Shown piece after piece: positions 3 to 43,965 of a stretch of DNA of 64,000 bases. The notes under the pieces are model-generated. The model did no database searches and was not told the DNA's origin. It worked only from the letters and a program-made list of their open reading frames with translations. Each line of letters begins with the position of its first letter. The first letter of the stretch is position 1. The stretch comes from Blepharisma stoltei ATCC 30299 (Eukaryota; Protista; Ciliophora): the NCBI GenBank assembly GCA_965603825.1, contig CBFDEM010000054.1, positions 372,001-436,000 of the forward strand. Direction: 5' to 3'. Both the position numbers and the translations under genes were made by a program.

Positions 3-1889
3 GAAAGAACGGAGCCAGGGAGGCTTGCTTTACCAAAGCAAACAACTTCAGCTGCAGCCAAAACTCTTGAAGCTACAAAGCCAGAACAAATTGAGCAGAA
101 CATAGAGGTTAGACAAGTCGCTGTTAAAAGCATGGATAAAAATCTTCGTGCAGCAAAAGCACTAGTGTTTAATAAGCCTGATCAGTCTGTAGCAAAAACT
201 CAGCAGGACTCCTCAAAGCAGAACACTCAGCATGATCTGAATTTGCTATTTAAGCCTGTTTTGGAAATAATGAGCGAAATTTTCTTGGAAATTATGCATC
301 AGCCCCAGTTCAAAAGTGTAAGAATTATGGATTTCAGAGATGTAGAGCACGGAGAAGACCTCACGAGAGAATTTTATGCGAAGATGGATAAGCTGAATAT
401 TGATTTTGTGGTTGGGTGCTTGGAGAATATTCAAAGAAGAGCTAGCTCGGTAGCTGACGTTCTGATTAAGATGGAGCAAGAATTCGAGCTTTATAGTGAA
501 CTGATTTTGAGTGCTATTGAAAAAATTAAAGCTGATGCTCCCTATTTTAAATTATTTATTGATAGCTTGAACTCAATAGCTGAAACCATGTCTTCTATAG
601 ATGAAGGCGTAACTGAAGAACTTTTTAATGATTTCTTGATTACTCCTTTAGCAAAACTGTCTCTGAAAAACCCTCATAAATCAGTTGTTCTGGTCAACTT
701 ATTAAACAGCTTTTCCAAAAAAAGCCCAGCCATTAGATATCGCTATTTGTGCAGACTGATGGATATACTGCCAAATTATGCAGAATTAGTCAAAATTATT
801 GCTCCACTGGTGAAGTTTGACAAAGAATACTATGAAGAGCTTCATACATATTATAAGCATTATGCAATTTTAGCATTATCACACTCTTCTCCTGTAGTAA
901 GGACTGCTGGGATAGCTATTTTAGGCTCAATTGGGGACTTGAATCCTGAAATGATACTAGAAGAAGTCCATCAAGTTGAAAGACTCGGCAATGATACATG
1001 GTGGGAGGTAAAAGCACAAATTTTACGACTCTCTGGAATTATGCTTCCTCTAATCCCAAGAGAAAAAACAGAAACTCTATATAGTCTTATCACCTCAATA
1101 TTTGTCCCATCAGCTAGTAAAAATATTATCAGAATAGGCTTAATCTATCTAGCTCCTGTGCTGCATACATTTCCAGAGCTTTGTGAGATATACGTTGAAT
1201 GCTTATTGTCTCTTTCAAGTGAAGAAAGAGGGAAAATTCTAGATACTGAACAAGTTGTTAGAGGCAGCTGTGTGTTTGGAAGCAGCACACAAAGCTATAA
1301 GCTCTCTGGAGTTCCTTTAAGCTGGAATGCTTTAGGGATTGCATCAAGCTTAGCTAAATCAGTTATATATAGAAATTTAGACAACTTGGAATATGCACAT
1401 GTAGATGTTCTTTGGGCTTGCTTATACAAGCCACCAAATCAACATGAATGGATTAACGTATTTGACCAGCTGAAAAATTATATATATGTTGGCTTATGTG
1501 ACCCAGATATAAGTGAAGGAGTCATAGCTATTGCAAAGCACTTCTTAACAGCCCCAGGGATTATGACAGAAATCATTAAACGATCCAAAGATACCTTAAT
1601 AAGGAGCTTAAATCTCCTGTTAACCACTGATGTGGATAGGAAGTGTGTAGCTCAAGGATATGGGTTTATAAAATCATTGTACTGGGAATATGAGCTGCCA
1701 GAGCTACAGGAATTTGTATTTGTAGTGCTCAAAACTTTTGCTGAGAAGTACCCAGTGATTTTTGAGCGATCTGAGCTATTAGAAATTATCAACGAAATAA
1801 TCAGACATAGAAGAGGTGATATTTTTGGCGAAGATAAAGGGGAAATTGGCGCATCTTCTAAGAAAGGCTCAGAAAAAGAGATTAAATAA
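3..1889 (+). CDS. ARM/HEAT-repeat alpha-solenoid protein, 5'-partial
   Basis: Frame is open from position 3 through the 132..1889 ORF to TAA. Leu-rich helical repeats with HEAT-like motifs (LSHSSPVVRTAGIAILG; NDTWWEVKAQILRL). Confidence 0.7.
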   Translation, partial: ERTEPGRLALPKQTTSAAAKTLEATKPEQIEQNIEVRQVAVKSMDKNLRAAKALVFNKPDQSVAKTQQDSSKQNTQHDLNLLFKPVLEIMSEIFLEIMHQPQFKSVRIMDFRDVEHGEDLTREFYAKMDKLNIDFVVGCLENIQRRASSVADVLIKMEQEFELYSELILSAIEKIKADAPYFKLFIDSLNSIAETMSSIDEGVTEELFNDFLITPLAKLSLKNPHKSVVLVNLLNSFSKKSPAIRYRYLCRLMDILPNYAELVKIIAPLVKFDKEYYEELHTYYKHYAILALSHSSPVVRTAGIAILGSIGDLNPEMILEEVHQVERLGNDTWWEVKAQILRLSGIMLPLIPREKTETLYSLITSIFVPSASKNIIRIGLIYLAPVLHTFPELCEIYVECLLSLSSEERGKILDTEQVVRGSCVFGSSTQSYKLSGVPLSWNALGIASSLAKSVIYRNLDNLEYAHVDVLWACLYKPPNQHEWINVFDQLKNYIYVGLCDPDISEGVIAIAKHFLTAPGIMTEIIKRSKDTLIRSLNLLLTTDVDRKCVAQGYGFIKSLYWEYELPELQEFVFVVLKTFAEKYPVIFERSELLEIINEIIRHRRGDIFGEDKGEIGASSKKGSEKEIK

Positions 1890-1909
1890 GTATTTACTTT
1901 ATGAATTGC

Positions 1910-3031
1910 TCAGTCTATGTAAGTAAAACTGTTTGTAGCGGTGTCTAAACCACCTATTTGTTTAAGATATTCACTTCTTACAACTAAAATTCCAACATCT
2001 GTTGAAATGGAAATCCAAATCCCGCTTGCTTTGAGGCAGTAAGGATAACCCATTCCAAATAATCTTTCTCGGGATTCTACAATTAGGCCGTCAAGATCAC
2101 ATAGATCTATCATTTCTCGAATGTTTCCGTTTTCTCATAGGTAAATCAAACCTCGCTTGTCAACAGAAACTACTAGGCCTTTAGCTGCAGAAACATTCAT
2201 TTGGTGGTCTTCAGCTTCGTTTTCACTGAGATGTTGAGTTTGGATTAATGCTGGAAAAATAGCTACAATATCTGCTGGATGGACTCCAAGAGTTGAGGTG
2301 GATTCGCCTGTAGAAATGTCAATAGACCGTATTTCTCGATAATTATGAACGTAAATTATAGACTCCTGAGCTAGATACGCGCACGATAAGTGGCCAAAAT
2401 TTTTGTCTAAATCCTTAACTTTTTTATGAAACTGTTGGCTGATATTCAAAATTTTTAATTCCCTCAGTCCATTTTGGTGTTTTTCAATTCAAAGCAGCTT
2501 TTCTCCATTAAAATCCATCGGTGCAGAGTGTTTTGGCAGCATCATATCTTGATATTCATGAACTTCAGTCGTCGCCAAGTTATGAACGATCAGTTTGCCT
2601 TTGCCTTCTGCTCTCAGGTTTTCAAAAACTTCTCCTTCTTCCTCAATTATAACGATACAGATTTTTGGCCGAGCCTGAAAAACATGTGTCATGGCACATA
2701 TCATTGGAGAATGTTCCCTTCCTTGATGGTTCAACTCTTCCATATGTCATTCTCCTTTATCGTTTCTATATAGCACTAATACGTACAAGTCTCCTATAGT
2801 AGCATATAAGGTGCTTTCTTCACTGAGGTAAACCCCTTTTACACATTCTTCAGTCATTTCTGTCAAAAGAACTTGCTCTTTATTAGAAAGGTTCAAATAG
2901 CCAATCTGTCCAAGCGCTGTTCCATAAACCAACTGCGAACCTGCCATGTCGATGCATAAAATTGGGTCCCCAAAGCGAGTTTCTATTACAAATTCAAGTA
3001 CTCCTTTATTTGCAGGTGCGATTTTATTCAT
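1910..3031 (-). CDS. Divergent WD40-like beta-propeller protein (3' end uncertain, see findings)
   Basis: Track ORFs 2747-3031, 2489-2743, 2135-2449 and 1910-2113 are all in one frame and are joined by TGA codons. Propeller-like motifs: LVYGTALGQIGYLNL, GVHPADIVAI, VVSVDKRGLIYL-W(TGA)-E. Confidence 0.75.
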
Positions 3032-3046
3032 CTTTAATATAACTGA

Positions 3047-4480
3047 TTAATTATTTAATTCTATTTTCGGCCCTTCTTCATTAGCGAAAAACATATGCAA
3101 GTCTTTGTTAGGGATACTTTCTATACTATCTGGAACCCATTCAGGAGCTGTCGCTGATTTTTGGATCAGCTTATGTCTTACAGCGATTTCAAAATTAAGG
3201 CTTTTGTGGAGGTAAAGCTGGTTTTGCAAGTTGTAGCCTTGAACTAGGCAGTCTTTTTCTGAAAGCTTTCTGCATTTAAGAAGGTGTTTCATGCAAATCT
3301 AAATAAAAATTACTTTAAGTGATAAAGGACATTGCTGTTTAATAAGTCTGATTGCGCCTTTTATGAATTTTACAACAACTGATTCTTCATCGTTTTCTAG
3401 CTTTAAAGCAGAGGATAAATTTTCTTTTAATTTTTCAATGCTGTTAGATTTCCCAAAGGTGTTTTCTAAGACTTGGGTTGCCTGATGTAATATATTATTG
3501 GTAAGCTGAGGGGCACTGTGATATTTATCAGCTGTTTGCCATGGGTTTGTGCTAGTTTTTAGTTCGTTGAGCAGCTTATTTACAGCGTTCTCCGATGGCA
3601 GATAATGTGTGGCAATTCCTAAAAGAAAAACATCAGCACCAGTAATAGTGTCACCAGTTAATGATAAATATAAGCCCAATGGAAATTTCAAAACATTTGC
3701 AAAAAAATTCGCTGTGCTCCCATCTTGGCAAGTCCCGAAGGTATTTTCTGGAACAGAAAATACAGTAGTAGGAGTAGCAATCCTTATTTTGCAGCTCAAT
3801 GCTAAACCTGTTCCTGAACCCATTACAGTCCCTTGCATTATACATACAGATTTTTGCTGTCTCTTTAAGAAATGGAGAGCTCTGGCTTTATTTTCACAGA
3901 ATGATGATATAGATCTTGGGTTCAATGAAAGCCATAGCATATCGTCACCTATGCTAAATTCATCTTTCTGTCCGCATAGAATAAGAGTGATATCATCGTT
4001 TTTCAATTGCAATATTTTTACAAGGCTTTCAACCATTTCAAAATTAAGAGCATTAGAGTTGCTTGCTCGGTTTAATGTAAGGATGCTATAATTTTGACCA
4101 AGCTCAATATCAATTAAAGGGCTTAGTCCTCGTTCTGTACTGTTTTCTTTGAAATACCAATGAAAATACCCTTGCCTATGCATAAAATTTGTGAAATTTA
4201 CATTTTTGCATGACTGCCTGAATTCAGCTGATTGAAGCAGCTTTAAAAAATGCAAGCAGCGGGGAAATCTTAATAATAGTTACATAATGAATTTCGAGTA
4301 TTCTGGCTGAGTTCAATAATTAAGGTATTCCAAATATTCAATAAACATTGGATCATCAAAATATCCCATGCCCGCTAAATCTAAGTCACTGTTACAATTG
4401 AGATAGCCCATATGAGAAAGACATTGTATAAACTCAAGCTCCATTTGGAACCTTAAAAACTCAGATTGCTCATCTTGCAT
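3047..4480 (-). CDS. MED31: Mediator subunit MED31/SOH1 domain in frame with a 3-hydroxyisobutyryl-CoA hydrolase (crotonase-fold) domain; 3 tiny introns
   Basis: Spliced N-terminus MQDEQSEFLRFQMELEFIQCLSHMGYLNYLAGMGYFDDPMFIEYLEYLNYW(TGA)TQPEYSKFIIFPRCLHFLKLLQ matches MED31. It continues without a stop into ILTLNRASNSNALNFEMV, GTVMGSGTGL, FSVPENTFGTCQDG, CPLSLK (HIBCH-like) and ends at TAA 3047-3049. Confidence 0.85.
3299..3313 (-). other. 15-nt spliceosomal intron (HIBCH-like domain)
   Basis: GTAATTTTTATTTAG, A at position 10. Removal deletes an in-frame TAG and joins CPLSLK to ICMKHLL. Confidence 0.9.
4269..4283 (-). other. 15-nt spliceosomal intron (MED31)
   Basis: GTAACTATTATTAAG. Removal deletes an in-frame TAA and restores MED31-like SKFIIFPRCL. 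Confidence 0.9.
4381..4395 (-). other. 15-nt spliceosomal intron (MED31)
   Basis: GTAACAGTGACTTAG. Removal deletes a 5-aa insertion and restores YLNYLA, colinear with MED31 YLNFLA. Confidence 0.8.
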
Positions 4481-4540: not shown

Positions 4541-6958
4541 ATGTCTGACTCAAATATGACGATGCAGTGCAAAGTAAAAGAGTTCGAAAATATTTCATCA
4601 TTTATCTGTGTGTGCTCGCTAAATGGATTTTTGAGTTGTAAAGCTCATTTGATGGAACATATTGACAAATCTATAAATACTATCAATCATTATGCTGAAC
4701 TAATTGCATGGGCTTGGCATCAGCCGAAAAGAAAAAGCGACGCAGATATCTTAAAGAGCTTAGATTCACAGACTTCAGCTTTTAAGACTCAATTTCGATT
4801 TTTGAATCCAAACAAATTCTCTTTTAATCCTATCTTGCACAATATAAATAATAAAATCTCCAAACTGCTAGCTAAAACTATTCTTCAAATAAATGACAAT
4901 TCCTCACTTAATGCCAGCTACATTAACAAAATCAACTTTACCAGGAATCAAAAAATATTGAGGAATTTTAAAGATTTGATGACTGAGGATTTGCAAGATA
5001 AGTTATTTAGTATTATTTTGCAGTCTAGAGAAAATAAAAACCTAAAATATGCAGCCAGCAACGCAATAACTATTTTGAATTACAGCAAATATGAATTTAT
5101 TAATAAAGATCTGAGGGGAGTTGAAATTGAAGGCGCTAACCTTTCTGAAGCCCTTATAATAAATTCTAACTTTCAAGGTAGCAATTTGAAGAAGGTTGAT
5201 TTCTCATTTGCAAACATTTATGACTCAAATTTTTGTGATTGTGATTTAACAGATGCATGGTTTGGACAGTACCCTCCCATATTAGATAAATTTTCTGAAA
5301 ATGATACACTTTCATGATGTGGGGATTATTTAGCATATGCTTATGGCTCCACTGTAGTTTTACATAATATTCACAAGGGAACTGTGTTTAAAGAATTTAA
5401 ACATAATCAAGATATTAATGCAATTGGATTATCAAGGGATGGGCGTTTTCTTGCAGCTGCTGATTGGAACTATAAAATCCATCTATGAGATATTGATCTA
5501 CAAAAAGAGCTCATGGAATTAAAAAGGCACTCACAGACTATTAAATCAATTTCATTTTCTCCAAATGGTGAATTCTTTGCAACAGTGGGCAATGATTGTA
5601 GATTAAGATTATGAAATATTGCAGATCGCAGGGCAATTGATACACGAAAACTAAGCTGAGCCTTAACCTCAGTTTCATTTTCTTCTTGCAGTAAATATAT
5701 CGCTTTAGGATTTTGGCATTTGTCCACAGTGTTTTCTATAAGGAATATTGAATTAAACAAATGTGTATTTTATCACCCAAGTGATGTAATAAATGTGTCC
5801 TTTTCCTGCTTTTCAAGATATTTAATTACTTCATGCAATGATTTTATTATCAGGATTTGAGATACTGAATGTGGGCAGCTAATAAAATCAATTAAAATTT
5901 GAGCTTATAAAGAAAGGCCTTCAGGAAAAAACTTATTTAATCCAAATTCATTGATTAAGTTTTGAGCAAAATATTGCTTTTCAGAATTCAATGATGCATT
6001 TTCAAATGTTTTTCACCGTTGGGGAATAAATTTTTCTCCTGATCAAAAATACGCAGCTGTTCGAAATACTCAAAAGTCACTTAAAATTTGAGACGCAAAA
6101 GCTTTAGTGGATCATCCTTCTTTTTACAAGCAAATCACTTCTATATCTTTTTCTCATGATGAAAAATATATTGCGCTTACAAATGCTTCGAAATCAATAA
6201 AAATACACAATGTAATTGCAAAGAGAAAAGAATTTAAACTTAAAGGCAATCAAGGTATTGCTAAATTTGTAGCATTTTCAAGACTTGATTATTTTCTTGT
6301 TTCGCTATATGTGAATAATTATATAATTTTATGAGATGTAGTCCATCAATTTCCGATAAAACAATTTGAAATAGAAGATTGCCAAATTTCTGCTGTTGAT
6401 GTATCTTTTAATTGCAATTTTATAGGTACTGGGTTTTTAAAAGGCCATATCAAGATATGAAATATACTATCCCCTTCAGAAAATAATATTCTAAGGCAGG
6501 TAGGGAAAATTAATTGCATTAAATTTTCGCCTTCTGGAGAGTATATTGCTGCTTCAAGCTCTAATAGCGAATTTCGCTTATGAAGAATAAAGAAGAAAAA
6601 CTTTGTGAACTTCGGATATAAAGATTTGAAAAGAGTATTGTGCTTTTGCTTTACTTTATCTGGAAAATATTTAGTATTAGCCTATTCAGAAGGGCCTACA
6701 ATTCTTTGAGATATTCATAAAAGACAAAAACTTACAGTTATTCAAACAAATGAAGCGGTCACATCAATTTCTCCATGTGGAGACTTATTGATAACTGGAA
6801 GTCTTAATGACATAAAAGTATGAAATATTTGGCAAGGAAATATGATAAAAAAGTATAATTATCACTCTGAAATCATCAGTTCAATTCAATATATTAATAA
6901 AAAGTCAATGCTTGTTGCAGCAGGCACTGATGATACAATTAAATTCTTCAGCATTTAA
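4541..6958 (+). CDS. Pentapeptide-repeat + WD40-repeat protein, copy 1 (~805 aa)
   Basis: Single frame from ATG 4541 to TAA 6956-6958 with about 13 in-frame TGA, mostly at the W of WD motifs (IHLWD, LRLWN, IRIWD, LKIWD). Pentapeptide region AASNAITILN..DLRGVEIEGANLSEA..FQGSNLKKVDFSFANI. Confidence 0.88.
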
Positions 6959-22044: not shown

Positions 22045-23721
22045 ATGTCGTATTCTAGTCATAATAAACCCAAAGTACGACGGTTCAAATTAGTCGTGCA
22101 AGTGGCAGGGGTGTTTAAACAATTGACGATTTTTCAATGGATGTCAGTTTCTGAGCTGAAACAAGAAATCTACAGGCTTTTTGGAGTCCCAGTGCAGCAA
22201 CAAAGATTGTTTAATGGACATTTGGAACTTTCGAGCAGCAGGATGTTGGAGGACTATCACATTTTTAATCAGGATAAGAAAAATAGAATAATTGTGGTCG
22301 AGTTTAGGCAGCTTGCAGGGTCGTTTATTAGAATTTGCCCGGGATCTGAAGTAAATTCGGCGCTATCGCAGCTAGTAGCAGAAATACAGCATGGATTGGC
22401 GATTGGACTGGCTCCAAATTTGACGATGGATGGGACTGGAGGGACTTATTTTTTGAAAAATACTTATAAAAAGATCAGGGCAGTTTTTAAACCCCTTGAT
22501 GAAGAAGCTTTTGCTCCGTTTAACCCGAGAGGCCATGTCGGGAAATTTGGAAGCCCAGGATTTCGACCAGGAGTTTTGTCAGGAGAAGCTGGGTATAGAG
22601 AAGTTGCCGCGTATTTATTAGACCATCAAAGGTTTTCAGGCGTTCCCAATACTACTCTTGTTGAATGCCAACATGATAATTTTTATCATGGAACCGACAG
22701 AAATGCAGAAAAAAACCCAAAAAAAGGGTCACTGCAAGAATTTATAAAAAGTCAAGGATGTATTGAAGATTTCTCGTCTTCACTATTTACCAAGCAAGAA
22801 GTTCAAAAAATTGCTATATTAGATATAAGAATATTGAATATGGACCGAAATGAAGCAAATATTTTAGTTCAGGATAATTTCCATTTAGTGCCCATTGATC
22901 ATGGGCTTTCGATCCCTGATTGTTTGGATATTTCTGAATATGACTTGTGCTGGATGTCTTGGCCACAAGTAAAGAGCCCAATTGAGCCAGAATGTTATGA
23001 TTATATTGAAACTATTGACCCTGTAGCTGATATAAGCTTGCTGAGAGATACAATGCCATTTAGAGATAAATGTCTCAGGAACATTAGAGTATCAAGCTTA
23101 TTATTAAAAAAAGGTGCGGAAGCTGGCCTCAGTCTTTTTCATATCGGCTCAATGTTGTATCGTGAAGGATACGAAGACAACCCATCTATAATAGAAAACA
23201 TTATCGATAAATCTCGAAATATGTATTATACCCTCAACGAGCACCTCCATACTCGACTTATGATTGAGCGATCTTTAAGCCCTCGAATAAAAAACAATCG
23301 TCAGCGTGCCTTTTCTTCAGGCGAGGAGTCTTTCCTAGACACTTTAGCCAGACTTTCCCCCAAGAATCAAAGTTCTCCACAGAACACTGAGACAGATACG
23401 TCTGATAATGCTTATGATGTAGTCATGATGATTTCTGAATTATCTGAAGAAGACGAAGAAGACCATGAAAATTTCCCCCATCTGGACTCTCTAGGGAGGA
23501 GCCTCTCACTGCCTTCTTTAATGGATGATCATTCTATTAAGAAGAAAGTCAAGAAAAAGCGTGATGAAGACGAAGCGTTCAATCAAAAATTATTTTATTA
23601 TATAGAAGCCTTCATGGAGCAAGCTATCGAAATGAAGGTCAAAGATCTTAGAAGTAATTCTTACTTAGAAAATGAAACCCCTGAAGGGCGTATCAGATCC
23701 TGCAGTTATGCACTTGGCTAA
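22045..23721 (+). CDS. Type II PI4-kinase gamma-like protein with N-terminal ubiquitin-like domain
   Basis: UBL (VSELKQEIYRLFGVPVQQQRLF..LEDYHI) plus DGTGGTYF, AVFKPLDEE, GEAGYREVAAYLLD, GSLQEF, LDIRILNMDRNEANIL, LVPIDHGL. Start taken at ATG 22045 after AT-rich spacer. Confidence 0.88.
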   Translation: MSYSSHNKPKVRRFKLVVQVAGVFKQLTIFQWMSVSELKQEIYRLFGVPVQQQRLFNGHLELSSSRMLEDYHIFNQDKKNRIIVVEFRQLAGSFIRICPGSEVNSALSQLVAEIQHGLAIGLAPNLTMDGTGGTYFLKNTYKKIRAVFKPLDEEAFAPFNPRGHVGKFGSPGFRPGVLSGEAGYREVAAYLLDHQRFSGVPNTTLVECQHDNFYHGTDRNAEKNPKKGSLQEFIKSQGCIEDFSSSLFTKQEVQKIAILDIRILNMDRNEANILVQDNFHLVPIDHGLSIPDCLDISEYDLCWMSWPQVKSPIEPECYDYIETIDPVADISLLRDTMPFRDKCLRNIRVSSLLLKKGAEAGLSLFHIGSMLYREGYEDNPSIIENIIDKSRNMYYTLNEHLHTRLMIERSLSPRIKNNRQRAFSSGEESFLDTLARLSPKNQSSPQNTETDTSDNAYDVVMMISELSEEDEEDHENFPHLDSLGRSLSLPSLMDDHSIKKKVKKKRDEDEAFNQKLFYYIEAFMEQAIEMKVKDLRSNSYLENETPEGRIRSCSYALG

Positions 23722-38560: not shown

Positions 38561-40120
38561 TTACTGGGAAGTTTGGCTTAACCCGATTCACTTAGAGCTA
38601 AAAGTAAAAGTTTTAGTGTTTTGAACACTACTTGCGATGTCTCTTTGCTCTTTCATTACTAGCACCATGTACTTATCAACAGTTTCTATACCAATGATAG
38701 CAGATAATAGCTCTCTGAGAGTTATCCTAAACCTAGACTCATAATTGTTGACACTGCATTCATGAGTTAGCCTTCTTATTTCTTGCTCCTGCTCTTGTTT
38801 GTATTCTTCTTTAAGAGCAGAAATTTTTTGCTCTAGAACCAATACATCCCCAAAATTTGTGGTCGAGTTAAGGCTTTTCATACTCGCTCTCCCTGAGTCA
38901 TAATCTTCTCATATAATGTTAACTTGTCTTGTTTTTCTGTCAATTTTGTATTCAGGTTTTTTAACTCTAACGTTTTGCGTGATTTTTGCGAGTCTCGTTT
39001 TCACATTATTTCACCTATCGTTAGATGATGCCCTACTAAGGCTTGGCCTCTTCCCTGTAGAGCTCATAAGTGTTTCCAAATAGCTGTCGATCTCTTTACT
39101 TTTTTCAGCCTGGTGCATTATAAATTTAACTGCATCAGAATCTAAAAATGATGGGAAATTTTCAATTGAAATTTTATATTGCAGTTTTCATAAAACTTTT
39201 ACAATTCACTGGAGACCTTCATTTCTTGTGTCTTTTCCTTCTAATAAAAGGTCTGTATAGTGCTGAATTTGGGCATTTTTTACCTGGAGGATTTTTTTCC
39301 TTAAGTCAGATGATGTTTCATCTAACTCTCTTAGCCAATTCATTCTTTTCGATATTTCTCCAGTTATAGACTCTATAATGATAGCTGCTTCAGATTCCCT
39401 TCTTACTGTGTCTTCCCTTAAATTCTGCTTTTTAGACAAAAATTGGGCCATTTCCATTTGTCGCCTCCTCAATTTCATTTTCTCTTTTTTCTCAGTTTCA
39501 GCGAGCTCCTTTTTCCAATTTTGTAATTCATCAGAAACTGCTTTCATTTCTTCCCTCATTTCAGAGCAATCTTTTCTATAAGTCTCTCTTTGCTCATTGC
39601 ATTTTTTTAGTTCGTTTTCAAGGTTTGTAGCAAGAGTTGATAAGTCTTCTTCATACAGTCTATAATATCTGCACCTTTCTTTGAATTGTTCGTCCTCTAT
39701 TTTTTTACTTTGCCTGAATTCGTGCAGATGAGAAGTCTGCTGGGTGCTTGGTCTGCTTGGGATTTTATCTTTTCCTTTTCTTATTGATAGATGCTGCTCT
39801 ACGACATCGCTATGATCCAGCCTTCGCTTTAGCATTTCCTGTGCCTCTGATAGTGTAGTTAAAGAGTCATTTCCTTTTCGTGTCTGCTCTCATTGCTCTA
39901 ATGAAGCCACAGCTTCTTTTTCAAGTTGATCATTTTTGGCATAACCAATGTTTCTTCTAGATGATGAGAACAGCGATAGTCTTGTAGATATTTTGTCAAT
40001 AGTGAACTTTGAATTATTATTGCTCGTGAAATTTGTATCAAAATAATTATCTTGCTTTCAATTCCTTGTCGATTTAGGAGATATTACAGTTTGAGCTCTA
40101 GGAGAAAATAACTTATTCAT
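38561..40120 (-). CDS. Coiled-coil protein, function unknown
   Basis: ATG 40120 is in frame with ORFs 39206-39835 and 38588-38881 via TGA (GKDTRNEGLQW(TGA)IVKVLW). First TAA is at 38561-38563. Confidence 0.72.
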
Positions 40121-40501: not shown

Positions 40502-40712
40502 AATAGTTAAATGAGTAAATTCTATTAAAAACTTAGGCTCTATCAGTAAACAATAATTATGTAGGGAGTTAGCTAAATTATTCTGAGCTTATTAATCCTT
40601 AATTTTTATCGTTCTCTTTTGGTTTTATCAATTGGTACAGGCAATAATTACTTGGGTGCTCTTTCCATTTCTTTTTGTCATTTCTTTATGGTCTTTTTAT
40701 CAATACTCTAAT

Positions 40713-42644
40713 ATGGGATGCTGCTCCTCAGGAAGAAATAAGCCGCATAGAGATGATACTGCACTTAAGCTGGATGGCTCTAACAGCTCAATAGAAGCTT
40801 CCCCAACAAATGTGCAATGGGTAAAAGATTACCTAAAAATCGTTATAAAGGAAATCCACTTAACGAAAACAATTGAAAGAATCCTGAAAAAACCGAATGA
40901 AATTTATTTCAAAATAAAGGTCAAAAGTCTTGTACAAGACACTACACCTGCTACTATAGAAGGATTACATTATACGTGGCCTGAAGTTGAAGAGTTTAAA
41001 ATAAACTTAGACAAAGACCTTGGGCTGCTTGAAATTATCTTATGTGCTAAGAAAGATGAACTAGAAACAGAGCTCGGTTATGTATGTGTAGATATAGAAG
41101 TGTTCAAAAAGCATGTAAAGTTTTCTGGAAGTGCCCCAATTTACTACAGATGTTTAAAGACTGGAATGGTTCTTTGCGATATCTCGAAGTACAGCTCTGT
41201 GAATGATGTAAATTTTGTAACATTAGGCAATATCTCAGGAGAAAGTATGCAGTTTTTATATTTGCCAGCAAAAGACTACCCAATACAATATACATCTGTA
41301 ATTAATAGAACTCCTCAATTTGTATCAGGAAATTCCTCAAATTCGATAGAGAATGGAGTTGCTGTGGATGGGAGCAATATGAATATTATTACACATATAA
41401 AAGACCCTAAGGTGTCTTTTCAAGATTTATCGCAGTGTTTGAAAATTGAGTCTCCTGATGTAATCTATCACGCATGCGAAAAGTTAAGGTTTTTTGCATG
41501 CCAGTCTTCTTATGCAGCTATGTTGGTATCAAATGATCTTGATGTCATTCAACACATTTTATTCTCATACTCGCAAGACCCATATGTCTCTTTACAAACC
41601 CTTTGAGTCTTATATAGAATTACCGAAAACTCTTCTGAGGTATTCAAAATTTAGATTTATAACCGCTGAAACAAAGACAAGCACAGAATTATATCTACGA
41701 TTGTTAAAATCTGAAAAGAGTTTCACAGCTTAGAATGTGTTAGTCTATGCATCGAAATCGTTGTAAAGTACATCCCCGATAATATTATAAAAACGAAACT
41801 AGTAAAATCTATTTAGATTTATCTTTGCTCTCAAGAGCACATGATCCAGCTGATTTTTGAGACACTTAGAAGATATAACTCAACACAAATTATATCACCC
41901 TGCTTGTTAATATTGTCTGAGTGTTTGGAAATCCCAAACAAGCCTGAATATGTAACCATTATATAGTGGGACCTAATGGACCAGCATGGGTTGATAGAGC
42001 TTTTAGACAAATTTTTATATTTCCATATTCTGAATCATGAAATAGTAATTACAATTTTAAAAATCCTGCAAAGTTTTTCTAGCCAAACCTATCGAAATTT
42101 AGTCGCCTCCAAACTCCACTTTGAAAGGCTAAATTCGGTCTTGGATTATTATATAGACGACTTAAACAAAGTAAAGTCAGTGATCAATATTATTTCGGAA
42201 CTGATCACTCTAACACCTATCCTCAAATCTGAAGGTCAATTCATTCTAGGAGTCGAAATGCTTATAAAAATTCTTGAAAGGCATATAGATTCGAAAATAG
42301 CGATGGACACTGTTTTTATGTGCCTTACAAAGGTAGTTGCAGCAGTCCCAGGCATTCCTGAAGTATTGATTAACCCTGATTCCTTAGATCTCTATTGCCA
42401 ATCTTTAGCTCTAGCTGACCAGGATATTAAAATTTGTGGGGAAATACTAAAACTGCTGACGTTATTATCAGAAAAAAATAAAGAGGTTAAAGATTCTATA
42501 GTAAACAGCGAAGAATTCAAAGAGAAATTCAGATACTTGCTTAAGCTTCATTCAGTACCTTCGGCAGGATCACTCGTGGGGCAAGAAAAGCATATACAGC
42601 AGATAAGAAAATACGCAACAGACCTTTTAGGCGTTGCTGAATAA
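40713..42644 (+). CDS. N-acylated C2-like + ARM-repeat protein; 3 tiny introns
   Basis: Start MGCCSSG (myristoylation/palmitoylation-type motif). C2-like segment (YTWPEVEEFKI..LEIILC..LGYVCVDI) and helical ARM-like C-terminus. Continuous after TGA=Trp and removal of three 15-nt introns. Confidence 0.75.
41640..41654 (+). other. 15-nt spliceosomal intron
   Basis: GTATTCAAAATTTAG, phase 0, ends in an in-frame TAG. Confidence 0.85.
41802..41816 (+). other. 15-nt spliceosomal intron
   Basis: GTAAAATCTATTTAG, phase 0, ends in an in-frame TAG. Confidence 0.85.
41952..41966 (+). other. 15-nt spliceosomal intron
   Basis: GTAACCATTATATAG, phase 0, ends in an in-frame TAG. Confidence 0.85.
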
Positions 42645-42669: not shown

Positions 42670-43965
42670 ATGTTTTCCATATTATCAAATCCAACCTTAT
42701 GCTGCTCAAATAGTTTTTGCTGTGCTTTCTTATGTGGATTATGCATGAGGCAATGCAATACGAAGACTTCACATCATGCTAAGTTGGGGTATATTGCTAT
42801 TACGCTCCTAGCGTGCTTTATGTCTTTGATAGCACTTATATGGGGCTCTTGATTGTTTGAAAAACTTGATTTGATTGGACTTGTGGACTGTTATGACGAT
42901 GATTCTAAGTGTATTGGTATCAGTGTGGTCTATAGAATAAGTTTTTCACTAGGAATGCTTTTTATTACTGCTACAATACTATCGCTTATTGGGGGAGAAA
43001 TTTTTGAGCTGTTTGAGAATAGCTGCTGGCTATTGAAGATTTTTGTATTTTTCACTGTTTTACTATTAACGTTTATGGTCCCGAACTATATTTTTGTAAA
43101 CATTATTTAGGACTGATACATCATCTTTTCAGTGATAGTCGGAATTATATTTTTAGTGTCACAGATTATTATCCTTATTGACTTTGCTTATCACTGAAAT
43201 GAGGCCTGGGTTGAAAACTATGAAAACTCCAACGAATCCCGCTTTTGGATGTTTTGACTATTTTTCTTTCCAATCTTGTCTTGGATTCTAATATTCACAA
43301 TGTCAATTTCAAGCTTTATTTATTTTCAATGCACAGGACCCATTGCATTGACTTCAGCAAGCCTTCTGTTTGGAATTGGGCTTACAGCAGTAAGCAGCTC
43401 GAAACTAATAGAGCATGGCTGTAATCTTTATTTAGCTTTGCTTACAAGCTCATTCATTTCGTTAATTTTCAATTACTGGACTTTTAGCGCTTTAGCTTCA
43501 AATCCAGTCGAAACTTGCAATTTATGAGAATCAAGGCAACACAATTTTTTATTAGTTGGGGCAGACTTATTTGTGTGCATGCTAACTTTGGCATATTTCG
43601 CTATGAAAATTGAAGGGAAGCCACATTATGAAGAAGTAAAAACTTCTGACGTCTCATCATTGGAAATGAAATCTATGAAAGAAATTACTACAACAGACGA
43701 AGAATATGTACATCAGCAAAATCCTACACAAAAGGTTAGCTTGCAGCAGAATTCAACTTATTTTCATTTATTGATGACTGTTTATTCGCTAACACTTGCG
43801 ATGATTTTGACTAATTGGGGGCTAGTTACAGGGTGGATGTAAGTTATATATAGGACTTCTATGAGTTTTTGGATTAGGATCTGCCAAGCAAGCTTGTGTA
43901 TGATTCTTTTCTTTTGAAGTGTTTTGGCTCCTTCATGCTGCCCAGATAGAGATTTCTCATTATAA
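42670..43965 (+). CDS. Serine incorporator (SERINC/TMS1 family) multipass protein; 3 tiny introns
   Basis: CIGISVVYRISFSL, QIIILIDFAYHW(TGA)NEAW, GSLLTSS, YFHLLM..AMILTNW, W(TGA)SVLAP..PDRDF. TAA at 43963-43965. Confidence 0.92.
43096..43110 (+). other. 15-nt spliceosomal intron (SERINC)
   Basis: GTAAACATTATTTAG. Removes an in-frame TAG. Confidence 0.9.
43421..43435 (+). other. 15-nt spliceosomal intron (SERINC)
   Basis: GTAATCTTTATTTAG. No internal stop, but removal restores the SERINC-like GSLLTSS. Confidence 0.75.
43839..43853 (+). other. 15-nt spliceosomal intron (SERINC)
   Basis: GTAAGTTATATATAG. Removes an in-frame TAA and restores the conserved C-terminus. Confidence 0.9.

What the first reader, a model, noticed from the sequence alone, without database searches (positions are those of the whole stretch)
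1886..1930. Candidate context-dependent UGA: one gene reads TGA as Trp three times, then appears to stop at TGA
Seen: the minus-strand WD40-like gene has internal TGAs at 2747, 2489 and 2135 and another at 1910-1912, just after its propeller region. If that last TGA is Trp, the next in-frame TAA is at 1478-1480. That would add about 144 residues running 412 nt antisense through the convergent HEAT-repeat gene. If it is a stop, the two convergent stops are 20 nt apart, matching other convergent pairs here (27 nt at 23721/23749, 23 nt at 43965/43989). A possible 15-nt intron at 1915-1929 does not change the frame. Known: position-dependent stop/sense decoding near mRNA 3' ends occurs in Condylostoma and karyorelict ciliates, whereas the Blepharisma code is usually treated as UGA=Trp only. 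Inference: UGA may still terminate when very close to the poly(A) tail, which would be an ambiguous code in this lineage. Alternatives are a stop completed by polyadenylation (T/TA + A tail near 1888), an atypical 28-nt intron (GTAAGAAG..AAATAG) giving ILVVV*, or an assembly error. This rests on a single gene.
Basis: partly seen in the sequence, partly recalled or inferred. Interest (0 to 1): 0.85.

Follow-up and report, generated by a model that had tools for sequence, protein, structure and literature searches.

The report
Fossil UGA before poly(A)-completed stop
In this Blepharisma gene a UGA (normally tryptophan here) sits where related genes stop, but the mRNA ends 34 bases later and its poly(A) tail creates an ordinary in-frame UAA, so the gene does not show that UGA still terminates, though it is a good place to test that.

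Summary
The minus-strand WD40-like gene (ATG 3031) has in-frame TGAs at 2747-49, 2489-91, 2135-37 and 1910-12, and the next in-frame TAA is at 1478-80. The three internal TGAs align with conserved Trp in paralogues and orthologues.

Spliced RNA contigs from four runs change the picture:
- Neither proposed intron is removed.
- The TGA is confirmed in RNA.
- The mRNA is polyadenylated right after T1876, 34 nt past the TGA. That T plus two tail A's gives an in-frame UAA.

So under plain UGA=Trp the ORF closes after 12 more residues (WAIHKVNTYLIS). It does not run to 1478.

Seven orthologues from standard-code ciliates stop (TGA or TAA) within one codon of this TGA. The closest paralogue ends TGA-GCA-TAA at the same position. 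The TGA therefore looks like a fossil of the family's stop codon.

Whether some ribosomes still stop there is untested. It lies 35-37 nt from the tail, in the zone where UGA is depleted. Published work already raised eRF1/tRNA competition in B. stoltei. Other first-stage notes in this genome flag similar loci, none of them checked.

The parts
1913..3031 (-). Conserved coding region (373 codons) of an uncharacterised WD40-like beta-propeller gene, with three internal UGA=Trp codons (2747-49, 2489-91, 2135-37)
   Evidence: translation; the internal TGAs align with conserved W (TGG or TGA in paralogues); unspliced RNA contigs cover 1876-3027; the paralogue folds as a beta-propeller.
1910..1912 (-). 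Terminal in-frame TGA, sitting at the family's ancestral stop position
   Evidence: present in RNA contigs; seven orthologues stop with TGA or TAA within one codon of this position; paralogue L002 has TGA-GCA-TAA at the same position.
1877..1909 (-). Eleven codons (AIHKVNTYLIS) between the TGA and the poly(A) site. This is either a C-terminal tail or a 34-nt 3' UTR (with 1876). It is 21% GC against 38% in the CDS, and it overlaps the plus gene's last codons and 3' UTR.
1876..1876 (-). Last templated base (T) of the minus-strand mRNA. Poly(A) addition here makes an in-frame UAA (T1876 + AA).
   Evidence: table 7: the run X1 contig covering 1876-2018 carries 9 untemplated T before 1876 on the plus strand. 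The run X2 contig (1876-2964) ends at the same base. The genome continues TTTCT on the minus strand, so the junction is unambiguous. 1912-1876 = 36, so the codon is in frame.
132..1889 (+). Convergent plus-strand gene (helical-repeat protein with a weak HEAT hit), ending in TAA at 1887-1889
   Evidence: RNA contigs cover 1-1905.
1890..1905 (+). 3' UTR of the plus-strand gene. Poly(A) is added after 1903-1905, so the two mRNAs overlap antisense by about 28-30 nt (1876-1905).
   Evidence: table 7: the run X2 contig 1-1905 carries 11 untemplated A behind 1905.
1915..1929 (-). 15-nt GT..AG candidate intron, not spliced in any contig
   Evidence: records 2, 9, 13 and 19 cover it with 0 gaps. True 15-nt introns at 3299, 4269 and 4381 are left out in the same runs.
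1954..1981 (-). 28-nt GT..AG candidate intron that would give ...ILVVV-TAG, not spliced in any contig
   Evidence: records 2, 9, 13 and 19 cover it with 0 gaps.

Best explanation
The TGA at 1910-1912 is a real, unspliced codon at the position where this protein family has always ended. It is a fossil of the ancestral stop codon in a lineage that now reads UGA as Trp. The mRNA is cleaved 34 nt further on, after T1876, and the poly(A) tail completes an in-frame UAA there. The reading frame is therefore closed in the orthodox way. Ribosomes that read the UGA as Trp add 12 residues (W + AIHKVNTYLIS) to a disordered tail and stop at the tail-made UAA. Any ribosomes that stop at the UGA give the ancestral C-terminus. 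Both products should work, which would explain why a UGA is tolerated here, in the 3'-proximal zone where UGA is otherwise depleted. Shown: the codon, the lack of splicing, the poly(A) junction, the in-frame UAA, and the coincidence with orthologue stops. Inferred: that read-through to the tail-made UAA is the main route, and that termination at the UGA is at most partial.
For:: there are no gaps or joints anywhere in 1876-3027 in four runs. The same runs omit the true 15-nt introns at 3299, 4269 and 4381, so they are RNA. Nine untemplated T precede 1876 in run X1, and a second run's contig ends at the same base. and arithmetic: the codon starting at 1876 is in frame with the TGA; the three internal TGAs of the same gene align with conserved Trp, so this mRNA's UGAs are decoded as Trp; orthologues P0020-22 and P0167-170 all end ...IGGIDPLNN(F/Y)TN(T/A)x. 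Where DNA was held, the next codon is a stop: TGA (L006, L012/13) or TAA (L007-L011). Their neighbouring genes use all three stops; the paralogue on C22 ends TGA-GCA-TAA, with the same 12 codons between the GG motif and the TGA. TGAGCA is a 6/6 identical island after 45 nt with only 19/45 identity. This implies constraint on both codons, and conservation of GCA is more easily explained if W-A is translated. If a downstream UAR were not needed, a tail-made in-frame UAA would arise by chance only about 1 time in 6 (my estimate). Both paralogues have an in-frame UAA after the TGA. In my sample, G at +4 follows 27% of sense TGAs but only 13% of stops. [quoted passage not shown] Transcripts without a 3' UTR, whose poly(A) starts right after the stop, are known in the heterotrich Condylostoma (PMC4967479).
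Against: The poly(A) junction rests on assembled contigs (one with the T-run, one ending at the same base), not on counted raw reads, so heterogeneity of the cleavage site is unknown. Cleavage one base away would leave no stop. A zero-length 3' UTR is atypical, whereas 34 nt fits the heterotrich norm of a 21-26 nt median (10.1101/2022.04.12.488043). The 11-codon tail is 21% GC and looks like UTR. The UGA sits 35-37 nt from the tail, inside the zone where UGA acts as a stop in Condylostoma (PMC4967479). B. japonicum eRF1 recognises UGA weakly in vitro, and UGA is depleted 25-30 codons before B. stoltei stops (10.1101/2023.10.09.561518; my 264-kb sample). There is no protein-level or ribosome-level evidence either way.
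Confidence: 0.55

Rival explanations
1. Position-dependent termination. This UGA is recognised by eRF1 efficiently because it lies about 35 nt from the poly(A) tail. The protein ends at ...FTYID as in the orthologues, 1876-1909 is an ordinary 34-nt 3' UTR, and the tail-made UAA is a coincidence or only a back-stop. Blepharisma would then have a weakly ambiguous code like Condylostoma's.
For: The orthologue stops coincide with the TGA. The paralogue's TGA-GCA-TAA looks like a tandem stop. A 34-nt UTR is typical and the tail is UTR-like at 21% GC. TGA is depleted in the last 60 codons (0.19% against 0.49%, p=3e-5) while TGG is not. Literature supports eRF1 activity on UGA, UGA depletion before stops, and a -39 nt boundary in Condylostoma (10.1101/2023.10.09.561518; PMC4967479).
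Against: Termination at UGA has never been observed in B. stoltei (10.1101/2023.10.09.561518). An orthodox in-frame UAA exists at the tail, so nothing forces this reading. If the codon were selected purely as a terminator, a single G-to-A change to TAA would be expected over the divergence between the two paralogues (47.5% identity), as is seen among the much closer orthologues. Conservation of GCA after the TGA is unexpected for UTR sequence.
Confidence: 0.3
2. A spliced form supplies the stop. Removing the 28-nt GT..AG element (1954-1981) would bring a TAG into frame (...ILVVV*). The 15-nt element (1915-1929) might also be removed.
For: GT..AG boundaries exist in the sequence.
Against: All contigs of four runs cover both elements without gaps, while three true 15-nt introns nearby are removed in the same runs. 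The 28-nt splice would delete the C-terminal segment conserved in all orthologues. The 15-nt splice would not change the frame or remove the TGA.
Confidence: 0.03
3. The ORF really continues to TAA 1478-1480 (517 aa), antisense through the neighbouring gene, on a longer transcript.
For: One contig of run X4 spans 1524-2978.
Against: That contig starts at an allelic bubble of the plus-strand gene. It can be a merge of the two convergent transcripts across their 30-nt overlap (k-1 for k=31, if the contigs were built with that word size). Two other runs end at 1876, one with a poly(A) run. The 144-codon extension has no homologue, and all relatives end at the TGA position.
Confidence: 0.02
4. The UGA encodes selenocysteine.
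For: B. stoltei has a tRNA-Sec(UCA) (10.1101/2023.10.09.561518).
Against: No SECIS or any other Rfam match was found in 1300-2300. The transcript ends 34 nt after the codon, which on general knowledge is too short for a eukaryotic SECIS. Orthologues have a stop there, not Cys or Sec.
Confidence: 0.01

Closest known systems
Context-dependent stop/sense UGA of Condylostoma magnum and karyorelict ciliates (Swart et al. 2016, PMC4967479; Seah et al. 2022, 10.1101/2022.04.12.488043)
   Same: It occurs in a heterotrich ciliate. UGA is Trp inside the gene. A UGA sits at the conserved protein end about 35 nt from the poly(A) tail. UTRs are very short, and UGA is depleted before stops.
   Different: In those species the terminal UGA is the only stop available and termination is shown by ribosome profiling. 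Here an in-frame UAA follows at the poly(A) junction, and termination at the UGA has not been shown.
Stop codons completed by polyadenylation (Blastocystis nuclear genes, PMC4159000; animal mitochondrial mRNAs) and UTR-less transcripts of Condylostoma (PMC4967479)
   Same: The genome encodes only the U of the stop codon, and the two A's come from the tail. There is no 3' UTR after that stop.
   Different: In Blastocystis it affects a large share of genes. Here it is one mapped case, and it lies downstream of a fossil UGA that may itself stop some ribosomes.
eRF1/tRNA-Trp competition signal in B. stoltei (Swart et al. 2023, bioRxiv 10.1101/2023.10.09.561518)
   Same: The organism and the idea are the same: residual UGA recognition near mRNA 3' ends, inferred from UGA depletion 25-30 codons before stops.
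   Different: That work is a genome-wide statistic and reports no individual UGA stop. This is a single locus where the UGA coincides with the ancestral stop position.
Tandem or back-up stop codons in ciliates with reassigned stops (PMC6879139)
   Same: An in-frame UAR shortly after the primary stop position limits the cost of read-through. The paralogue's TGA-GCA-TAA has that form.
   Different: Here the first 'stop' is a reassigned codon, and the back-up stop is made by the tail rather than encoded.

Membership tests
Ambiguous (context-dependent) stop/sense UGA | The same codon is decoded as an amino acid inside coding sequence | tested here: met
   TGAs at codons 95, 181 and 299 align with conserved Trp in paralogues and orthologues.
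Ambiguous (context-dependent) stop/sense UGA | The codon is the terminator at the gene end, with no other in-frame stop before the poly(A) tail or with direct evidence of termination | tested here: not met
   An in-frame UAA is formed at the poly(A) junction 12 codons later. No ribosome or peptide data are available.
Ambiguous (context-dependent) stop/sense UGA | The terminating codon lies close to the poly(A) tail (within about 39 nt in Condylostoma) | tested here: met
   The UGA occupies -37 to -35 relative to the first tail A (PMC4967479).
Ambiguous (context-dependent) stop/sense UGA | Genome-wide depletion of the sense 'stop' codon upstream of true stops | tested here: met
   In a 264-kb sample, TGA is 0.19% in the last 60 codons against 0.49% in the interior (Fisher p=3e-5), and TGG is unchanged. 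This agrees with 10.1101/2023.10.09.561518.
Polyadenylation-completed stop codon | No genome-encoded in-frame stop (under the organism's code) between the conserved CDS and the cleavage site | tested here: met
   Under UGA=Trp, the next encoded TAA is at 1478-80, far beyond the cleavage site at 1876.
Polyadenylation-completed stop codon | Cleavage directly after an in-frame U or UA, so that tail A's complete UAA | tested here: met
   An untemplated T9 run (plus strand) abuts 1876 in run X1, and the X2 contig ends at 1876. 1912-1876 = 36, so the codon is in frame. The support is from contigs only.
Polyadenylation-completed stop codon | Recurrence across many genes, or a conserved cleavage-guiding motif | not tested
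   The reads tool was limited to one 6-kb stretch. Two unchecked first-stage notes (s1-646815, s1-673650) suggest further loci.
Blepharisma tiny (15-16 nt) spliceosomal intron | The element is removed from the mRNA | tested here: not met
   1915-1929 and 1954-1981 are retained in all contigs. True introns at 3299, 4269 and 4381 are removed.
Selenocysteine UGA | A SECIS element in the 3' UTR | tested here: not met
   No Rfam match. Only 34 nt remain before the tail.
WD40 beta-propeller | Propeller fold or a Pfam WD40 match | tested here: inconclusive
   The AlphaFold2 model of paralogue P0023 has pLDDT 86 and is an all-beta propeller. Foldseek finds only generic WD40 propellers (TM about 0.5). 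Pfam hits are all below the curated cut-offs. So the fold is met, but no named family is.

The most novel reading that the evidence does not exclude
Blepharisma stoltei retains Condylostoma-like, poly(A)-proximity-dependent UGA termination and uses it at a small set of genes whose UGA survives at the ancestral stop position. Candidates are this gene, its C22 paralogue (TGA-GCA-TAA), and a kinesin ending TGA-TAG. The 'unambiguous' Blepharisma code would then be weakly ambiguous. The reassignment would have passed through an ambiguous intermediate rather than through codon capture.
Probability: 0.3. Interest if true: 0.75.

Novelty: new member of a known kind. Interest (0 to 1): 0.5.

Why it matters
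Blepharisma is treated as the clean UGA=Trp relative of the ambiguous-code ciliates. Whether its release factor still competes for UGA near mRNA ends is an open question, so far supported only by a codon-depletion statistic and an in vitro assay. This locus gives a concrete natural test case. The UGA sits at the position where orthologues stop, 35-37 nt from a mapped poly(A) site, and the two outcomes differ by a 12-residue tail that mass spectrometry or ribosome profiling could tell apart. It also shows that gene models in this genome can need the poly(A) tail to close the frame. A code-4 annotation without that would either run 144 codons antisense into the neighbouring gene or truncate arbitrarily. 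A UGA surviving at an ancestral stop position in two old paralogues bears on how the reassignment happened (ambiguous intermediate or codon capture). However, a later TAA-to-TGA change cannot be excluded.

Tried and rejected
- **Word-index homologue search with the last 74-aa piece:** no candidates.
- **Exact look-up of the 67-aa terminal ORF in public assemblies:** not on record.
- **Pfam on the four TGA-free pieces and on relatives:** only sub-threshold propeller hits.
- **The gene's own annotated protein:** it never appeared in the homologue lists, so I could not see how the depositors ended the model.
- **Metagenome scan for orthologues from other Blepharisma species:** these would show TGG, TAA or TGA at the site. 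The scan gave only standard-code or distant ciliate relatives.
- **Genome-wide sampling:** Near-terminal TGA counts are therefore small, and the apparent uptick in the last 10 codons is not significant (p=0.3).
- **Survey of Rab C-termini as a natural stop-codon test set:** loci could not be cut out for the same reason.
- **Rejected readings:** the 28-nt and 15-nt introns, extension to 1478, assembly error and selenocysteine.
- **Handling of the read-through protein:** it was never sent to a search tool, and pieces were searched apart. It was translated with the organism's own code only inside my scripts, for the alignment and the tree.
Full report
**Organism and locus.** The window is G000:C54:372001-436000 of a 41.46-Mb, 64-contig assembly. 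Proteins encoded by paralogous loci in the same genome are named Blepharisma stoltei by NCBI and UniRef. The size fits the published 41-Mb B. stoltei ATCC 30299 macronuclear genome, which has 15/16-nt introns, tiny UTRs and UGA=Trp (10.1101/2021.12.14.471607).

**Observation.** Translating the minus strand from ATG 3031 gives in-frame TGA at 2747-49, 2489-91, 2135-37 and 1910-12. The first in-frame TAA is at 1478-80. The convergent plus-strand ORF ends with TAA at 1887-89, so the two stops are 20 nt apart.

**UGA is Trp inside this gene.** The genome holds four paralogues. The closest is on C22 (L002 = P0023, 377 aa). Metagenomes and Logan assemblies hold seven orthologues of the same subfamily (P0020-22, P0167-170). 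In the alignment, codons 95, 181 and 299 fall on Trp columns that are invariant or nearly invariant in the subfamily. The paralogues use TGA or TGG interchangeably at these columns.

**Transcript evidence.** Four runs of one study hold the locus as contigs. They are RNA: in the neighbouring gene they lack exactly 15 nt at 3299, 4269 and 4381 (table 4).
- Within 1876-3027 there is no gap, joint or differing letter. Neither the 15-nt element (1915-29) nor the 28-nt element (1954-81) is spliced, and the TGA is real.
- Run X1 has a contig covering 1876-2018 with nine untemplated T before 1876. Run X2 has a contig ending at the same base.
- The genome continues TTTCT on the minus strand, so this is a clean poly(A) junction after T1876.
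- The plus-strand gene's contig carries eleven untemplated A behind 1905. The two mRNAs therefore overlap tail to tail by about 30 nt.
- The one contig crossing both genes (X4, 1524-2978) starts at an allelic bubble of the plus-strand gene. It is best read as a merge across that overlap.

**Consequence for the frame.** 1912-1876 = 36, so the codon that starts at T1876 is in frame with the TGA. With two tail A's it reads UAA. Under plain UGA=Trp the protein would be 385 aa and end W-AIHKVNTYLIS. It does not run on to 1478. By my estimate, a tail-made in-frame stop would arise by chance about one time in six. Its presence therefore mildly favours the view that a downstream UAR is needed, meaning the UGA is read through at a meaningful rate.

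**The TGA sits at the family's stop position.** All seven orthologues end ...IGGIDPLNN(F/Y)TN(T/A)x.
- Where DNA was available, the next codon is TGA (L006, L012/13) or TAA (L007-L011).
- Their neighbouring genes use TAA, TAG and TGA as stops and have no internal TGA. These are standard-code ciliates.
- Our gene reads ...IGGLDTATNSFTYID-TGA, and the orthologue stops fall within one codon of it.
- The C22 paralogue reads ...NGGIESTAPSLGSKS-TGA-GCA-TAA, with the same 12 codons between GG and TGA.
- The two paralogues are only 47.5% identical and sit unresolved outside the orthologue clade.
- TGAGCA is nonetheless a 6/6 identical island after 45 nt with 19/45 identity. In our gene a small indel appears to have pushed the following TAA out of frame.

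The TGA therefore looks like a conserved fossil of the ancestral stop. An early TAA-to-TGA change in the Blepharisma lineage cannot be excluded.

**Stop or sense?** The evidence points both ways.

For sense:
- The same mRNA decodes three other UGAs as Trp.
- The authors of the genome report only Trp decoding (10.1101/2023.10.09.561518).
- Both paralogues keep an in-frame UAA after the TGA.
- A pure terminator should have drifted to TAA, as it does among the much closer orthologues.
- The GCA after the TGA is conserved.
- G at +4 is commoner after sense TGAs (27%) than after stops (13%) in my sample.

For (partial) termination:
- The orthologue ends coincide with the TGA.
- The 33-nt tail is 21% GC against 38% in the CDS.
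- A 34-nt UTR is typical of heterotrichs, whereas a zero-length one is unusual (10.1101/2022.04.12.488043).
- The UGA lies at -37 to -35 from the tail, just inside the -39 nt boundary where UGA is predominantly a stop in Condylostoma (PMC4967479).
- B. japonicum eRF1 recognises UGA weakly in vitro, and UGA is depleted 25-30 codons before B. stoltei stops (10.1101/2023.10.09.561518).
- I reproduced that depletion on 264 kb: TGA is 0.19% in the last 60 codons against 0.49% in the interior (p=3e-5), and TGG is unchanged.

The AlphaFold2 model of the paralogue is a confident beta-propeller (pLDDT 86) with a disordered tail from residue 367. A 12-residue difference at the end should therefore be harmless either way.

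**Verdict.** The gene does not require UGA termination. The best reading is a fossil stop that is now mostly read through to a poly(A)-completed UAA, with an unknown and possibly appreciable fraction of termination at the UGA. Selenocysteine is excluded: there is no SECIS and only a 34-nt remainder.

**What the gene is.** It encodes a member of an uncharacterised, mainly ciliate family of about 340-380-aa single beta-propellers. The family has conserved ETRFGDP and FGMGYPY motifs. No Pfam family reaches its cut-off.

**Limits.**
- The poly(A) site rests on contigs from one study, not on counted reads.
- No other Blepharisma species could be reached.
- The genome sample stopped at 200 kb.
- The read-through protein was not sent to any search tool. 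Pieces were searched apart, and the full translation was used only in my scripts.

**Related first-stage notes.** Other notes on this genome flag similar loci: UGA as a possible stop, stops made by polyadenylation, and UGA absent near 3' ends. They are unchecked leads. They suggest the pattern is worth a genome-wide look.

Noticed in passing
L029:1244-2971 (G000:C22:151244-152971, +): A 574-codon kinesin-like gene uses only TGG for Trp, and its single TGA is the very last codon before TAG (…LLQDM-TGA-TAG). It looks like another fossil or tandem stop.
   Followed up: partly
L025:963-2582 (G000:C22:110963-112582, +): The ORF ends …NFQS-TGA-Leu-TAA-TAA, with a TGA two codons before a double TAA.
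   Followed up: no
window 38561-40120 (-) and 40596-41654 (+): Two more long ORFs in the window have a TGA 9 and 16 codons before their TAA/TAG, inside the zone where TGA is depleted. Their poly(A) sites and orthologue ends were not checked.
   Followed up: no
window 1876-1905: The 3' ends of the two convergent mRNAs overlap antisense by about 28-30 nt (poly(A) after 1876 on the minus strand and after 1903-1905 on the plus strand).
   Followed up: yes
window 3031-3049: The upstream co-directional gene's TAA (3047-3049) lies only 15 nt before this gene's ATG (3031). RNA contigs of the two genes are separated by a gap at about 3028-3053.
   Followed up: partly
window 1418-1553, 3122, 3338, 5646-5684: Run X4 carries a second contig version with 6 differences in 136 nt of the plus-strand gene, plus a few single differences elsewhere. 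This is probably a second allele or strain in a mixed-mating sample.
   Followed up: no
L002:1615-1617 versus window codon 340: At shared Trp columns the two paralogues swap TGA and TGG in both directions (our codon 299 is TGA against TGG, and our codon 340 is TGG against TGA). This shows the two codons are synonymous in this family.
   Followed up: yes
264-kb sample (window + G000:C22:1-200000): Interior sense TGAs are followed by A in 49% of cases and by C in only 8%. For TGG the figures are 28% and 26%. This is a strong +4 context bias specific to TGA.
   Followed up: partly
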